Part shown: in pieces, positions 2,968 through 9,988 of the stretch
How positions within the stretch are numbered: the stretch's first letter is position 1
Layout of the letters: every line of letters starts with the position of its first letter
Origin: Trichosphaerium sp. ATCC 40318
Lineage: Eukaryota > Protista > Tubulinea
NCBI GenBank assembly: GCA_038496445.1
Contig: JALMLS010000370.1
Span: forward strand, 1-64,000
Direction: 5' to 3'
DNA: 64,000 nucleotides
Notes under the pieces: model-generated
What the model was told of the DNA's origin: nothing
Seen by the model: only the letters and a program-made list of their open reading frames with translations
Databases searched by the model: none
Program-made: the position numbers and the translations under genes

Positions 2968-5699
2968 ATGATCAAGCTCCCTACGTTAATCTTCATATTA
3001 CACATCACAGTGCTCATCCCGGTTGCTATTGGATCGCTATCGTGGATTGAAAACGGGGCACCAGGTAATCCCTCTTTTTTTATGACATTTCCTATTCGTT
3101 TGTTATCAATAACCCCAAAGAACGCTTAAAATAATATAAGAACAGCATTTGAAATCTCGTGCTATGCAGTTTTAACGACTTTTCTCAGTTCATGCAAACG
3201 CTCCGTTTCTTGACTTTACAGGGGCGTCAGGTATACCAAATGGTACTTTAGAGGGTATTCTATGTAGCGCAAAACACGAGGTACGAAACAGTTTTAAATT
3301 TATTTTTAAATTTCGTCTGTACAGCGACTCTTTATGGTTAATCCTTTGGTAGCGTTATGTATGTGCTAACGTGACGACAAAGATACTATTTGTTGAGTTT
3401 GAACAGGGAACAGTTGATAGAGTGCTTCTTCCTATAGTTGACGAGCACGACAACTATGTAGCGATCATTTTAGGTTCAACCGACAGTACGCTTTTTTAGC
3501 TAAAATAATTTTTTTTGTTTTTTATATTTTTCGCTGTTTTTGCGACGTTTCGGGTCGTTGAACTGTTTGTTCGACTTTTTTGTGCACACAATTGTGCTTT
3601 CGTTTTATTTACACTACTCCGCGGAGCAACACGTATTAGCACGTGATCAAAAAATAAGTGGAACGAACTTTTTCTCTTTTTTTTTTTGTTCTATTTTGTG
3701 GTTTTGCTTTACTGTTTTTAGCGAGTGTCGAAGTGATAATTTATTTTTTTAAATATTTTTATATAGTTGTAGAAGGTCGTGGGAGGTATCTATACGATAC
3801 AGAACCAAGCAAGTTCACACCAGCGCCAATTTATGAAATAAATCTTAAAGCGACAAATCAGTTGAAATCTCTCTTGGGTTCAGATTCTACGGTCAATATA
3901 ACACTTACTACTGGAGGTAAACTACCACGCTTTTCCCTCTTTAAATAATGGGTTAATTCACACAATAAAAAACTGTTTAGATATCAACCAATGGAGCCAA
4001 TTGGAAAGATCACCTTGGAGCTATTTACTTCAGATAGTTGCTATAATGCTACCTTCTCTTATCACATTATTGTTTGTATGCTTGGTTGCGTATTATCATT
4101 ATTACTACCACGAGAACCATGTAATACTACCAAGAGTAGTCATGGGACTACATATCTTCGCACTTTTATGCACGTGATTTTTTTTTAACTTGTTTCAAAA
4201 AAAGGTCACAAAAAAAAAACTAGTTTGAATTGGCTACTATTTTGTTGTTTCACAAAACGTTCCACTAACATTTTTCTCCGTTTTAGCTATTGTCATAATG
4301 TCGTCGGACTATTTATTTAGAAATTTCCTACCTGCTACTATGGTTGTAGCGATGTTTGACATGTGTGTAGCACCAACAATAATAGGTAAAAACCGACTTT
4401 TTTTTTTCGTTCGAAAAGAATTGTATTTACGAGATTAATCTTATTTTATTCTTCTAGCTACTCTTCTAGTAACACTTGCATGGCAAGACGCATTAACTGA
4501 TAGAGAATTAACAGTTAAAGCTTTTCTTTCAAGCAAGATGCGTATCGCTTTTTATTGCTTAGTGGCTTTCATGGCTACTGTTGCTGTAATGAGTGTTATG
4601 GCTAGGATATTCGTACAAGAGGTTATTATTGATTATGCTTATGGCATGATATCAATACTTGTAGTCATAAGTACGCCTCTCTTTGATCTTTTTTTGGGTG
4701 CCGGTTTTTTTGTGTTCATTGTGTTCCACTTTTTTTTTTCACTTTTTCCGGAAAATCATTTTTTGGCTTCATAGTTTTGACAAGTTGTATTTATTTTGTT
4801 TTCATCGTAGTGATGCTTGTTTTTAAATTCAAAACTGCGTATGGTATTGGAAGTCAACTTGGAGGGTTTGATAAAACAAAAAATAGGAGTTCAAGAGAGT
4901 ATATGCGTCGTGTACGTATTTCTTTTTAAGAATTTTAAATTTCTTTTTTTTGTTTTACTTATTTAATTAATTACTAGCTCATGTGGCGTATGATACTGGT
5001 TGGTACTGCATACTTTCTTTACATCATTGGTATGATTGTAATAATTTCCGGAGGAGTCTCAACACCTGCAGGTACGCCTTTTCGAACAAGGGCAACTGCG
5101 TTGCAATGGCAAAAAAAAAGTATTTACTTACATATCTTTTTTCAGGGTTCTTTGCTACGGGCACTTTGATGTACACCTCTGCGTCTCTTGTTGCTGTTGC
5201 ACAGGTTCATACATTCTTCGTTAAGAGTAGAGAAATCAAGAGCTCAGCAAGCAGCTCAGGATCAAAGAAAACATCTTCTTTTTCGAAAAGAACAACAAGT
5301 GAGATAAGAAATGTAACAACAAGACATACTATCAAAGATCGTGTTATTACAATGACAGAGGCACTTCCAGCTCCTGATCAGGGAGAAGTAATAACAAAGA
5401 GGAGTATCGCATTAAAAGCAGAACCAGAACATCACGGAGACCATGAGGAGCTATCTACGTCTTCAGGTCGCACGGAAGGTAGTATAAGTTCAGCGAAAGT
5501 ATCAAATGCTGGAAACGGAAGTGGTGTCGTTTCGGATTCCTCTAGCCCTCCAGCACGTGCTTCTTTACACACATCAAGATCTAGTAGTAGAAAATCAAAT
5601 AAGAAAAACGTAGAGTATGAGCTTAGTAGCCAGAACAGTGAAATTGATGATGATGGAGATAATGACGACTCTGAGCATCTAGACGAGCATATCTTGTAA
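2968..5699 (+). CDS. Signal peptide + PA-like ectodomain + multi-TM (GPCR-like) membrane protein with Ser-rich tail
   Basis: MIKLPTLIFILHITVLIPVAIG signal. Exons splice in frame through PIYEINLKATNQLKSLLGSDSTVNITLTTGDINQW, then about 7 hydrophobic helices and a Ser/acidic tail (ORF 4983-5699). GC donor at 4170. Confidence 0.7.
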
Positions 5700-5867
5700 A
5701 TTTTTTTGTAGTTATAAATAAAATAAGAAAGTAATTTAAACTTGTTATGGAACTGTCACATAACCCGGAGAAATAGGATGCCACCTTTGCCGAAGACAAG
5801 GAAGATTTTTTTTGGTGGTTAAGTTATTGTTGTTTGTTCTTAAGTCAGTTGTTTGGCGGTTTGACAC

Positions 5868-7454
5868 ATGGCAGAGTCAGAGTTAAAACTGTACCTACAC
5901 GATGATGAGTACCAGGTTAGAGCATTTGAGCGTTCCAAACATAATTCTTGCATAGTTGCCAACGAATATAACACCTGAGGAGCTGACTCCTATAATTAAC
6001 GATATACGAAAGGAAATAAAGACTCTAGAACGAGAATTAGGAAAAACTGCTCAATTAGAAGAAGGTGCGTTATAAACGCTCCCATTACACTCAAAAATGC
6101 GAAGATTACGAAGTTGAGACGTTTACAATCCCGCCACATTCCATACCGATCAGATGTGATGTCAGACGATTTGACTGGGCTGTACGATAATGCGCTGTGC
6201 GAGGTTTTACTAATGTTTACGCAAGGCTCTGGCCGCAGAAGTACAATTTGATGTAATAACTATGGATCCACCTTGGCAACTCGCAGGAAGCACACCCACG
6301 CGTGGAGTACGTATAAACGCTAAAGCTTTGAAAGATAACGGTTTTTTACGCATTTTTCTAATTTTTTTTCTAACAAATGTCATAGGTGGCAATCGGTTAC
6401 TCAGCGCTTCCCAACCATGATATTGAGAATATTCCCATTCCAAAGCTACAGAAGAATGGATTTTTATTTATATGGGTTATCAATGCACGTTACACGTTTG
6501 CTACGAACCTAATGAAGAATTGGGGATACGAGTAAGAACCAAAGTTACAGTTTCAAGTGTTTGTTTTCGGATTTTTAAAACACTTTTTGATAGTACGCTG
6601 ATTAATGTTGTAGGATAGTAGATGACATTACTTGGGTAAAATCTACAGTAAATAGACGTATGGCGAAAGGTCACGGATTTTATTTGCAGCATGCAAAAGA
6701 AACTTGTCTCGTTGGTAAAAAGGTATGTAATCTCTACAATTCCCTTGCTTTTATGAGATTCTCTGGTTGATCAGTTTTCGTCTACTTGAATTTTTTCTTC
6801 AATGTATTTGTAGTGTTTTTCGTAGTAGTTGTGTATGAGGGCATTCATGTTCTGTTTCCACTCTGTTTTCTAAATCAATTTTGTGAGATTTTTGAAGTCT
6901 ACAAAACCCTTAGCTCACAAGTGCTTCAGCGTCTCTTATGGCGTTTAAGGCAATGACCGACTCTGGTTCGGTTTCACTCAATGCTTGCAGCGCGTAGTGC
7001 AACTTGATAACTTGATGTAAATGCTCAACAAAACATTATCATTCAGTTACACGCACGTATTTGCTTGTTTTTCTCTCCTAGAGCTATTATACTCGCTTGA
7101 CTACGCGTTGCATTCATCTCTTTCTGCGTATAAAATTCGCTAAATTTTAAGCCGAATTTCGTAGTGAAAAGCAAAGCCAGTTGCCACCCAAAACCAGAGC
7201 AAATATTTTCCTTAATGGTATCATCGTTTTTCTTATTTTTAACGCACAAATTATTACAGGGAAATGATCCACCTAACACACGACGTGGTGTTATGTCAGA
7301 TGTAATATTTAGCGAAAGAAGAGGCCAAAGTCAGAAACCAGAAGAAATTTATGAGATGATCGAAAATCTCGTTCCTAACGGGAAGTACTTGGAGATATTT
7401 TCCAGAAGAAATAACTTAAGAAACTACTGGTTTTCAATCGGGTTAGAACTGTAA
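5868..7454 (+). CDS. AMT1: MT-A70 family N6-adenine DNA methyltransferase, AMT1/MTA1 clade
   Basis: Spliced motifs FDVITMDPPWQLAGSTPTRGVAIGY, GFLFIWVINARY, WGYEIVDDITWVK, AKGHGFYLQHAKETCLVG and SDVIFSERRGQSQKPEEIY..YLEIFSRRNNL match ciliate AMT1/MTA1 as I recall it. Confidence 0.92.
6771..7117 (-). CDS. 83-aa orphan protein nested antisense in the AMT1 intron
   Basis: Exons 7117-7057, 7010-6919, 6869-6771; GT-AG introns of 46 and 49 nt; continuous frame from ATG to TGA. Confidence 0.7.
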
Positions 7455-7750
7455 TAATGTAAAATAATAAAAATAAAAACAAAAACAAAAACAAGGAAAA
7501 CGAGTAGCGCGAAAGTATGATCTATCTACGCGTGACTTATATGCCCTTGAAAGTAAGATTGTTTACGCCTTTAATAGCTATCAAAGGTAAACAATCTCAA
7601 TGCTTGGCGTGTGTGCACTGATTTGCAGTAAGAATCAGTTATCGTTGGAAGTAAAGCATAAGCGATTGTAGTGATGCTCATAAAACAATCACATCTTGCT
7701 GTTTAAGTTGTTAACTTCCCGCTTGAGATTTTTTGATTCAGATTGGCCTC

Positions 7751-9988
7751 ATGGCAACGTATCACGTAGTTCTGTTTGTATTAGTCATACTACACTCCTA
7801 CGTACAAGCTGGGGTGCTAATCGACGACTTTAGTCTCAATAGAGATGTCTCAATTAGCCGTCTATTAAACTTCTCGCAAGTTGTCGATACGCCATCGGAC
7901 CACTCGTCTTTTATTGGTAATCAACGAACTATCTCCATGTCAAAGAAAGAAGGCTCATTAGGCGGTTCAATATCAATTGTTTTGGGCTATTTAGCTTTTT
8001 CTAACGATGTCCGCACCCAAGCAATTGTAGACATCGACTACAGAGATATTTCAGGTGATATAACACCATCGTTAGACTTTACAGAAAATGGAGCCGGTGC
8101 GTGGTTGCTCTTAGCGAAAAACTAAAAAATTACAGATTGACGCAAGATTTTATTTTCGTGGTCACGTGATTTTTTTTTTCACAGTTTTTTTTTATTTTCA
8201 ACACACGTGTTTTGACTTGAACTTTAATTTTATTTATTTTTCCTTTTGTAGATTGTTTCTTGGTTGATGTTCTTGCTTCTGATCAACTACACACTATTTC
8301 ATTTATTGCAGATACACCAGAAGGACCACAAACATCAGAATTCTCATTTAGTTTCGGAGTGGAACCACCAGGAACAAGATTGTGCTTACCTTACGGAGGT
8401 AATTAGTGCCTTCTATTTTTGATTAGTGGCTTATCCAAAACGATGTTGTAGGTGATTTACAAGCGTATGATGAAGTGACTTCTTTACATTTTAGTGATGA
8501 AGCAGACAGCAATGGTGTAGATGCTCTTTATGGATTTTTCTGTGTTGCTCCTTCAGTCAGTTGTTGGCATGAAATTTCTCCAAACGGATCTGAACCTATA
8601 CTTGCCGGTGCGTGATAAGAACAAATAAGGATTGTACAGCACTTATAAAAGAGTTATAGGAGATACACTATCCGTGACTGTACACTGCGAGAACTTTGTT
8701 TCGCTTCCTCCAATGAACCAACCCCTAGACATCTCCGTTGAGTTTCCACCTGAAATTGGTACTATGGATCCTTCTACGTTCACGTGCTCCACGCCCGTAA
8801 GATTATAGTGCTACCATATACACTATTTAACGCAATTATTTGTAGGACGTACCTACAATCACAGCAACGCCACAACGGTTTCTCGTGTCGACAGACTTAC
8901 TAGACAACACAACAATAACTTGCTCTTTCGATATTGATCTCATTGCCGCAGGCACTGTTGAGGGGTTTGCCGCTCGAGTCCTTAACACAAGATCGGGTTC
9001 TGTATCATTCTCAAACACTGGAGGTAACAGGTAATGAATTATAACTCTTAAATTTGGAAAAAAAATTGACCAACTAATTAGAGCTGACTCAGTGGCCTTC
9101 TGCACTTTGGGTAACTTAACAAGTACCATTGTAGTACAACCTCCTCCACCAACACCTCCAACAACTCAAGCTCCAACAGTACCAGCACCACCGACAACAC
9201 AAGCTCCAACTACAACAGCTCCAACCACTGCGGCACCTACCACTGCAATGCCCACTGCTCCTCCTACCGAACCACCAACCACAACCCCACCAACTACAGA
9301 GGCGCCTGTAGTGCCTACTGCACCTGTTACGCCTACTACAAACCCGCCAACCACAGAACCACCTACTACCGAGCCTCCTACTGAACCTCCAACGACACAA
9401 CCTCCAACTACACTACCACCTACGACAAATCCTCCAACTACTCTTCCACCTACGACATTACCACCAACAACACTGTCGCCTACAACAAATCCTCCTACTA
9501 CTCTCCCTCCTACGACTTTGCCTCCTACGACGCTTCCACCAACAACACTATCACCTACAACTCTACCTCCGACAACTCAAATACCAACAACCTTACCACC
9601 AACTACAAGTCCACCAACAACTGAACCTCCAACGACTCAACCTCCAACGACAATGGCACCTACAGTGCCAGTCCCACCTACGCTTCCTCCACCAGATGAA
9701 TGCGTTGGACCTCTTGTCCACGGTAAGAGCAGTGGGTTTGGCGTATTGAGCGAAATCTACCAAAATCTTCAAGATCAGGCTGAGGATGATTGTGCAAGGT
9801 ACTCTCTTTTTCAAAACTTCTAGTTTTGTTAATTGTTGTTCAGGTGTTGCGATGCTATTCAATTTACTGGAGATCCTTTCGTACTTGATTGCACATTTGA
9901 GAACCGCGGTACAGCATACACGAGGAAAGATTTTTGGAGCAAACAAAGAAAAGATGTTACAGCAATGTGCGTTTGTTGTTGTACATAA
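7751..9988 (+). CDS. Secreted protein: beta-rich N-terminal region, mucin-like Pro/Thr stalk, Cys-rich C-terminal domain
   Basis: Signal MATYHVVLFVLVILHSYVQA. All exons join in frame. PPTT repeats. Last exon reads RCCDAIQF..AMCVCCCT* (TAA 9986-9988). Confidence 0.85.
9137..9693 (+). repeat. Coding 15-bp degenerate tandem repeat (PPTTx pentapeptide)
   Basis: Repeated PPTTL/PPTTE/PPTTQ/APTT units; a partial copy is at about 1224-1621. Confidence 0.9.

What the first reader, a model, noticed from the sequence alone, without database searches (positions are those of the whole stretch)
6771..7117. Spliced antisense micro-gene nested in the only long intron of the 6mA methyltransferase
Seen: AMT1 intron 6723-7259 is 537 nt, whereas its other introns are under about 85 nt. 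On the minus strand it holds ATG(7117)-exon-GTGCGT..AAG (46 nt)-exon-GTGAGC..TAG (49 nt)-exon-TGA(6771). Both introns have the genome's typical size and consensus, and both are needed to keep the frame: MNATRSQASIIALGEKNKQILIKLHYALQALSETEPESVIALNAIRDAEALKTEWKQNMNALIHNYYEKHYKYIEEKIQVDEN*. The product looks helical and amphipathic, matches no family I recognise, and is invisible in the ORF track. Inference: convergent transcription could regulate AMT1 expression or splicing, or the peptide could be a partner or inhibitor of the MTA1 complex, giving a candidate host-nested regulatory module.
Basis: partly seen in the sequence, partly recalled or inferred. Interest (0 to 1): 0.8.

Follow-up and report, generated by a model that had tools for sequence, protein, structure and literature searches.

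The report
Small antisense gene inside AMT1 intron
The one long intron of this amoeba's DNA-adenine methyltransferase gene holds a real, separately spliced transcript on the opposite strand that probably encodes a small lineage-specific helical protein, but nothing ties it functionally to the methyltransferase and such nesting is an ordinary kind of gene arrangement.

Summary
Transcriptome contigs confirm all six AMT1 introns (40-82 nt, plus the 537-nt one). One contig shows the junction 7010/7057 with minus-strand GT..AG ends, which is exactly the predicted nested intron 1. Intron 2 was not seen.

The ORF alone is not remarkable. A quarter of shuffles give 83 or more codons with two free introns; with intron 1 fixed, P is about 0.07.

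Three modest signals favour coding:
- Codon usage is like that of real exons (likelihood ratio about 7).
- Between two alleles the nested exons differ by 0.4% (one synonymous change), against 2% in non-coding DNA (P about 0.04).
- All indels lie outside the exons or keep the frame.

The stop codon is polymorphic. Five distant AMT1 orthologues have no intron or an 81-nt intron at this site, and no nested gene.

The genome is Trichosphaerium sp., which is rich in orphan genes. Verdict: a probable orphan nested micro-gene, with no support for the AMT1-regulatory idea.

The parts
5868..7454 (+). Host gene: AMT1/MTA1-type MT-A70 adenine methyltransferase. It has seven exons and a 765-nt CDS with a DPPW motif.
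   Evidence: All six introns appear as GT..AG junctions in transcriptome contigs. Pfam MT-A70 matches exons 5 and 7. The best PDB matches are Tetrahymena MTA1 (7f4l, 7yi8) at E 1e-21.
6723..7259 (+). Host intron 6, 537 nt. It is the only long intron of the gene and is spliced out normally.
   Evidence: The junction 6720->7258 (cut +2) is seen in X3 at depth 31.5 and in X4 at 6.15. The same intron position holds an 81-nt intron in Acaulospora colombiana (L007 4013-4093) and no intron in L003-L006.
7057..7117 (-). Nested gene exon 1, coding part: ATG at 7117, 20 codons plus 1 nt.
   Evidence: Translation. It is the first ATG of its frame. The 5' end of the transcript is unknown.
7011..7056 (-). 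Nested intron 1, 46 nt, GTGCGT..AAG. Confirmed by RNA.
   Evidence: The junction 7010->7057 skips 46 nt with CT..AC ends, in one X4 contig at depth 3.85 with 68 nt on the shorter side and no positional ambiguity. GTGCGT is the donor of 3 of 11 confirmed introns nearby.
6919..7010 (-). Nested gene exon 2: 2 nt plus 30 codons.
   Evidence: Translation. The single allelic substitution (6922) is synonymous. AF2 predicts two helices broken at the proline.
6870..6918 (-). Nested intron 2, 49 nt, GTGAGC..TAG. Predicted only.
   Evidence: The sequence is. No junction was seen in the four runs laid. Its GT and AG are kept in the C82 allele, which carries a substitution and a 1-nt insertion inside it. 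If it is retained, the ORF ends after 53 codons.
6771..6869 (-). Nested gene exon 3: 32 codons plus TGA at 6773-6771.
   Evidence: Translation. AF2 predicts one helix, pLDDT 92.6. The stop is TCA in the C82 allele, where the frame runs 7 codons further to TAA at 6753-6751.

Best explanation
An independent transcription unit sits on the minus strand inside intron 6 of the AMT1 gene of the amoeba Trichosphaerium sp. It is transcribed antisense to AMT1 and spliced with its own short GT..AG introns. It most likely encodes a small, soluble, all-helical protein with no detectable relatives (83 aa in this allele, 90 aa in the other), that is, a lineage-restricted ('orphan') nested gene.

Shown: the sequence model; host-intron splicing; minus-strand splicing of nested intron 1; absence of homologues at exon level; the allele pattern.

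Inferred: that intron 2 is spliced; that the RNA is translated; that the host intron is long because it houses this gene (an ordinary short intron at an old position that grew); and that any effect on AMT1 is incidental transcriptional interference and not a dedicated regulatory circuit.
For: RNA. The junction 7010/7057 has minus-strand GT..AG ends exactly as predicted from sequence alone. The host junction 6720/7258 is present in the same run. There is no coverage of the neighbouring intergenic DNA, so genomic contamination is unlikely.

Splice sites. Both nested introns match local usage.

Coding signals:
- Codon log-likelihood is 0.079 bit per codon, equal to AMT1 exons (0.08-0.12) and above 98% of stop-free non-coding frames, giving a density ratio of about 7.
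- ORF length, given the confirmed intron, has P = 0.07.
- The two alleles (C79 and C82) differ at 1 of 249 nested coding sites, and that change is synonymous. AMT1 CDS differs by 0.26% and the neighbouring gene's CDS by 0.27%, against 20 of 1013 sites (1.97%) in non-coding DNA; Poisson P = 0.043.
- The nested introns (2/95) and the rest of the host intron (3/190) diverge at the non-coding rate, and every indel lies outside the exons.
- The allele seen in X3 differs from the C82 allele at the C-terminus by a 6-nt, frame-keeping deletion (inferred).

Not a repeat or transposon. The genome holds only the allelic second copy and there are no terminal repeats.

Context. The genome is Trichosphaerium sp.: contig C1 is 1,255,013 bp, the longest scaffold in Table 1 of PMC10521059. 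That paper reports a mean intron of 75 bp and 7,489 ORFan gene models, so a taxon-restricted small gene is unexceptional there.
Against: Intron 2 was not seen spliced. X3 holds an unspliced 587-nt contig across the whole host intron.

Each coding signal is only marginal on its own (P 0.02-0.07).

The stop codon is polymorphic: three alleles give three C-termini. The X3 allele also carries a non-synonymous change (6781, Asp to Ala).

The C82 copy lies at the end of contig C82 and the window at the start of C79, so I read them as uncollapsed alleles; a recent duplicate is not excluded.

There is no homologue anywhere, so there is no conservation test across species.

Contigs give no strand, no transcript ends and no evidence of translation.

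If the transcript starts upstream of about 7224, a 25-codon upstream ORF precedes the main ATG.

The joined protein was never searched or folded, so membership of a known small-protein family is not excluded.
Confidence: 0.55

Rival explanations
1. It is a spliced natural antisense non-coding RNA. The minus-strand transcript is real but untranslated, the ORF is a by-product, and the RNA either does nothing or damps AMT1 by transcriptional interference or by pairing with AMT1 pre-mRNA.
For: The ORF length is within chance: 25% of shuffles reach it with free introns, and P is 0.07 with intron 1 fixed. Only one junction is seen, in one contig at depth 3.85. There are no homologues. The stop codon varies between alleles. 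Unspliced contigs reach about 30 nt into both flanking AMT1 exons (6694-7287), as an overlapping antisense RNA would, though AMT1 pre-mRNA explains them equally well.
Against: Codon usage is like that of real exons. Allelic divergence is low in the exons and normal in the nested introns and flanks, the one exonic change is synonymous, and indels avoid the exons or keep the frame.
Confidence: 0.3
2. This is the first reader's reading: a dedicated AMT1 module. Either the antisense transcription controls AMT1 expression or splicing, or the peptide binds or inhibits the MTA1-type 6mA writer complex.
For: Only position supports it: the unit lies convergent inside the last intron of AMT1, and unspliced contigs cross both intron borders.
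Against: AMT1 mRNA spliced across the intron is present at 1.6 to 4 times the depth of the intronic contigs in the same runs, so there is no sign of mutual exclusion. The nesting is absent from five other AMT1 loci. No exon matches any Pfam family at a curated cut-off. Earlier notes list many other long-intron antisense nested genes in this genome.
Confidence: 0.07
3. It is not a real feature. The spliced ORF is a chance construct, and the RNA junction is an assembly artefact or a 46-nt deletion allele within retained-intron AMT1 pre-mRNA.
For: A single low-depth contig supports the junction. The intron is retained in an X3 contig. The ORF is not beyond chance.
Against: The junction falls exactly on the GT and AG predicted beforehand, with no positional ambiguity and 68 nt on the shorter side. 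Neither genomic allele carries such a deletion. The coding-like signals would then be coincidence.
Confidence: 0.05

Closest known systems
Host/nested gene pairs: protein-coding genes lying antisense inside an intron of another gene (for example Drosophila 2mit in timeless2, PMC3786989; mammalian surveys, PMC11694760, PMC3192792)
   Same: The whole coding region lies in one host intron on the opposite strand. It has its own introns, the host intron is still spliced out, and both RNAs are found in the same sample.
   Different: The nested gene is very small (about 350 nt from ATG to stop) in a compact protist genome with 75-nt mean introns. The product has no relatives, and the transcript ends are unknown.
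Natural antisense transcripts of compact amoebozoan genomes (for example Entamoeba histolytica NATs, PMC7677554)
   Same: Antisense transcription within a gene of an amoebozoan.
   Different: This one is spliced, and it carries an ORF with exon-like codon usage and exon-like allelic conservation.
Taxonomically restricted (orphan) micro-protein genes. 7,489 ORFan gene models are reported for this genome (PMC10521059).
   Same: No homologue is detectable, it is short, it is predicted helical, and it is expressed.
   Different: The origin (de novo in the intron, or a diverged insertion) is unresolved. Translation is not shown.
Accessory subunits of the ciliate MTA1 complex (MTA9, p1, p2; PDB 7f4l, 7yi8)
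   Same: Nothing beyond the genomic address inside the catalytic subunit's gene.
   Different: There is no sequence similarity at exon level, and no conserved linkage with AMT1 in other lineages.

Membership tests
Nested intronic gene (host/nested pair, antisense) | The coding region lies wholly inside one intron of the host | tested here: met
   ATG 7117 to stop 6771 lies within host intron 6723-7259.
Nested intronic gene (host/nested pair, antisense) | The host intron is still removed from the host mRNA | tested here: met
   The junction 6720->7258 is seen in X3 and X4.
Nested intronic gene (host/nested pair, antisense) | It is transcribed on its own from the opposite strand | tested here: met
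   The 46-nt junction has CT..AC ends on the + strand, which can only be spliced from a minus-strand RNA. Its promoter and ends are not mapped.
Nested intronic gene (host/nested pair, antisense) | The whole transcript (UTRs included) stays inside the intron | tested here: inconclusive
   Unspliced contigs reach 6694 and 7287, about 30 nt into both AMT1 exons, but contigs carry no strand.
Protein-coding micro-gene | An open frame is kept across all junctions of the mature RNA | tested here: inconclusive
   Intron 1 is confirmed and keeps the frame. Intron 2 is not observed; if it is retained, the ORF is 53 codons.
Protein-coding micro-gene | Codon usage and a selection pattern typical of coding sequence | tested here: met
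   Codon LLR is 0.079 bit per codon, above 98% of non-coding open frames. Allelic divergence is 0.40% against 1.97% in non-coding DNA, P = 0.043, and the only change is synonymous. This is marginal strength; the stop codon is polymorphic.
Protein-coding micro-gene | It is translated | not testable with these tools
   No ribosome profiling or proteomics was available.
Orphan / taxonomically restricted gene | No homologue outside the lineage | tested here: inconclusive
   Exon 3 against 1.84 billion representatives gave only a spurious repeat protein. Word searches with the exon 1 and exon 2 frames found nothing. The Pfam and Atlas searches found nothing either. Exon-wise queries of 20-32 aa detect only near-identical kin, and the joined protein was not searched.
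Transposon or repeat remnant in an intron | Multiple copies, or terminal repeats | tested here: not met
   The genome holds only the 99% identical allelic copy on C82. Only short chance repeats were found.
Intron-hosted small RNA (snoRNA and the like) | A match to an RNA family | tested here: not met
   An Rfam E-value scan of 5500-8000 gave 0 matches at E of 1 or less.
MTA1-complex accessory subunit (MTA9 / p1 / p2) | Homology to a known subunit | tested here: not met
   No Pfam family passes its cut-off for any exon. Physical binding is not testable here.
AMT1/MTA1-clade MT-A70 methyltransferase (the host) | MT-A70 domain with a DPPW motif, closer to MTA1 than to METTL3 | tested here: met
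   Pfam PF05063 matches. DPPW lies in the ORF 6262-6420. PDB gives Tetrahymena MTA1 at 1e-21 against METTL3 at 1e-9.

The most novel reading that the evidence does not exclude
The nested unit is a lineage-specific regulator of the 6mA writer. Either its convergent transcription sets AMT1 output through interference or intron retention during the amoeba's life-cycle stages, or its helical micro-protein binds the AMT1 complex.
Probability: 0.06. Interest if true: 0.7.

Novelty: new member of a known kind. Interest (0 to 1): 0.3.

Why it matters
If the gene is real, it adds an unannotated micro-protein gene to a poorly studied amoebozoan genome. It also shows why plain ORF tracks miss such genes: every exon is 32 codons or fewer. 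It illustrates a useful annotation rule for this compact genome, namely that an intron many times the 75-nt norm is worth checking for an antisense tenant. It would matter more only if the tenant were shown to influence AMT1 and 6mA deposition, and there is no evidence for that at present.

Tried and rejected
- Rfam scan of 5500-8000 on both strands: nothing, so no intron-hosted RNA family.
- Repeat or transposon origin: only the allelic copy exists in 70 Mb, there are no protein-level paralogues, and there are no terminal repeats.
- Homology: Pfam on each exon at E up to 10 gave only a sub-threshold RskA_N match on exon 2 (16 bits against a cut-off of 27).
- Exon 3 against 1.84 billion representatives gave one hit, P0078. 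It is a 4,421-aa repeat protein whose repeats each match 7 of 17 residues, so the hit is spurious.
- Word searches with the 78-aa frame holding exon 1 and the 41-aa frame holding exon 2 found no candidates.
- The ESM Atlas feature search on exons 2 and 3 gave only unnamed short clusters, below the recognition level.
- Synteny: local tblastn of the three exon peptides against five AMT1 loci from other organisms (L003-L007) gave nothing better than E = 0.13.
- Amphipathicity is not above shuffled residue order.
The exons were handled apart and by reference. In scripts, the host-intron sequence with nested intron 1 removed was used only to measure ORF lengths against shuffles.
- The single look-up of sequencing runs and read-laying runs were used on X1-X4.

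Full report
**What is in the sequence**

The + strand of 5868-7454 carries a seven-exon gene. Its exons match Pfam MT-A70 and carry a DPPW motif (ORF 6262-6420). In the PDB they match Tetrahymena MTA1 of the MTA1-MTA9-p1-p2 complex at E about 1e-21, against about 1e-9 for METTL3. Calling the host 'AMT1/MTA1-type' is therefore justified.

The two proposed introns are 7056-7011 (GTGCGT..AAG, 46 nt) and 6918-6870 (GTGAGC..TAG, 49 nt). The plain ORF list shows only fragments of 25-30 aa there.

**RNA evidence**

Only one run search and one read-laying run were allowed. Runs X2, X3 and X4 behave as transcriptomes. Every intron of the three genes in 5000-9000 appears as a GT..AG junction, and the intergenic stretches have no depth.

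The AMT1 introns are 40, 40, 44, 79, 82 and 537 nt. The 537-nt intron is spliced in X3 (depth 31.5) and in X4 (6.15).

The key result is a junction in X4 from 7010 to 7057. It skips 46 nt and has CT..AC ends on the + strand, with no positional ambiguity and 68 nt on the shorter side (depth 3.85). A spliced antisense transcript therefore exists.

Several limits apply:
- The evidence is one contig at low depth.
- The contig does not reach intron 2, and no junction at 6869/6919 was listed.
- X3 holds an unspliced 587-nt contig (6694-7287, depth 8.08) that may be AMT1 pre-mRNA or unspliced antisense RNA.
- Contigs give no strand and no transcript ends.

**Is the ORF more than chance?**

Not by itself. 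If two GT..AG introns of 38-90 nt may be chosen freely, 74 of 300 dinucleotide shuffles of the intron give 83 or more codons. The + strand of the real intron gives 69.

With the RNA-confirmed intron removed, the 53-codon ORF that needs no further splicing has P = 0.074. The 83-codon ORF with one further free intron has P = 0.068.

**Independent signs of coding**

1. Codon usage. I trained a codon log-likelihood on long open frames from 256 kb of this genome (200 kb of other contigs plus window bases 8001-64000) and compared it with stop-free non-coding frames. The three exons score 0.079 bit per codon. That is the same as AMT1 exons (0.08-0.12) and above 98% of non-coding open frames, a density ratio of about 7.
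2. Alleles. The intron has exactly one other copy in the 70-Mb assembly, 99% identical, at C82:254723-255260.
   - That copy lies at the end of contig C82, while the window is the start of C79, so I read the two as uncollapsed alleles.
   - Over the 3.5 kb aligned, non-coding DNA differs at 20 of 1013 sites (1.97%), AMT1 CDS at 0.26% and the neighbouring gene's CDS at 0.27%.
   - The nested exons differ at 1 of 249 sites (0.40%), the nested introns at 2 of 95, and the rest of the host intron at 3 of 190.
   - The Poisson probability of one change or fewer in the nested exons is 0.043.
   - The one exonic change (6922) is synonymous, and all indels lie outside the exons. Both alleles keep all four splice sites.
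3. The C-terminus varies.
   - In the C82 allele the stop is TCA, and the frame runs seven codons further to TAA at 6753-6751.
   - The allele in X3 lacks 5 nt at 6769. Relative to C82 this is a 6-nt, frame-keeping deletion that reaches the same TAA (my inference).
   - X3 also has T>G at 6781, which changes Asp to Ala.

Taken together these signals favour coding, but none is strong.

**Relatives**

There are no paralogues in the genome and no Pfam family for any exon. Exon 3 against 1.84 billion representative proteins gave only a repeat protein with trivial 7-of-17 matches. Word searches with the frames holding exons 1 and 2 gave nothing, and the Atlas search gave nothing.

Queries of 20-32 aa only detect close kin.

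For synteny, I found AMT1 last-exon homologues and fetched five genomic loci. Four have no intron at this point; for example, L003 reads straight through. Acaulospora colombiana has an 81-nt GT..AG intron at exactly this position (L007 4013-4093). None has the nested exons (best E = 0.13). These organisms are very distant, so this shows only that the nesting is not an old, AMT1-linked feature. The shared intron position suggests an ordinary short intron that grew.

**Organism**

I checked this. Contig C1 is 1,255,013 bp, exactly the longest scaffold in Table 1 of PMC10521059. That paper reports 70.87 Mb, 37.69% GC, a mean intron of 75.4 bp, 7,489 ORFan models and single-cell transcriptomes. 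No close relative's genome is public, which explains why no conservation test across species was possible.

**Product**

AF2 on single exons predicts helices. Exon 2 forms two helices broken at its proline (pLDDT 93.3), and exon 3 forms one helix (pLDDT 92.6). Short peptides are often predicted helical, so this is weak support.

The helical hydrophobic moment is not above shuffled residue order. The product has no cysteine, one proline and a near-neutral charge. Nothing suggests a signal peptide or a membrane span.

**How it most likely works**

The unit is an autonomous nested gene. The host removes the whole intron, so AMT1 protein is unaffected. The tenant is transcribed convergently and spliced by the same machinery.

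Collisions between polymerases, or pairing with AMT1 pre-mRNA, are possible side effects. However, both mature RNAs are present in the same samples. Other first-stage notes on this genome report many long introns with antisense tenants, including a cytochrome c gene, RNase P/MRP RNA genes, an RGS gene and Vma12. I did not check those notes.

I therefore rate the readings as follows:
- orphan nested micro-gene, 0.55
- spliced non-coding antisense RNA, 0.30
- AMT1-specific module, 0.07
- artefact, 0.05

**Novelty**

Nested antisense intronic genes and orphan micro-proteins are well-known kinds (PMC3786989, PMC11694760, PMC3192792). This is a new, probably unannotated member. Interest is modest.

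Noticed in passing
window 1-~9000 vs G000:C82:~248000-257650 (L002): The start of contig C79 and the end of contig C82 carry the same genes at about 99% identity (46 differing columns in 3.5 kb). This looks like an uncollapsed heterozygous region left after Redundans, not a true duplication. RNA contigs carry variants of both copies.
   Followed up: partly
window 6731, 6769, 6781 (run X3 contig 6694-7287): A third haplotype, with a 2-nt and a 5-nt deletion and T>G, appears in transcriptome run X3. This suggests more than two alleles in this multinucleate amoeba, or strain drift between the genome and RNA cultures.
   Followed up: no
window 5223-5699: The Ser-rich last exon of the upstream + strand gene differs between the two alleles at 2.1% of sites, as much as non-coding DNA, while the AMT1 and downstream-gene exons differ at about 0.27%. 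The tail is either fast-evolving or unconstrained.
   Followed up: no
window 6722/7260; L007 4013-4093: The AMT1 intron position after '..GKK' is shared exactly with the glomeromycotan fungus Acaulospora colombiana (81-nt intron) and is absent in four other orthologues. It is either an old intron position or a parallel gain.
   Followed up: partly
window 6679-6684 (minus strand): An AATAAA motif on the minus strand lies 87 nt downstream of the nested stop codon, inside AMT1 exon 6. If it is used as a poly(A) signal, the nested transcript would overlap that exon antisense. Whether this organism uses the motif is unknown.
   Followed up: no
window 7147-7224 (minus strand): An out-of-frame ATG at about 7224 opens a 25-codon upstream ORF ahead of the nested start. 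It matters only if the transcript starts upstream of it, as the unspliced contigs reaching 7287 might suggest.
   Followed up: no
run X1, window 5882-6412: A large 2024 run labelled as a different organism holds correctly spliced AMT1 fragments at 99% identity or more. This amoeba, or a very close relative, is therefore present in that sample.
   Followed up: no
window 7741-9000+: The downstream + strand gene starts with a hydrophobic, signal-peptide-like N-terminus (my reading of the sequence, not scored). It has four RNA-confirmed introns (155, 53, 52 and 49 nt). It was not scanned against any family library.
   Followed up: no
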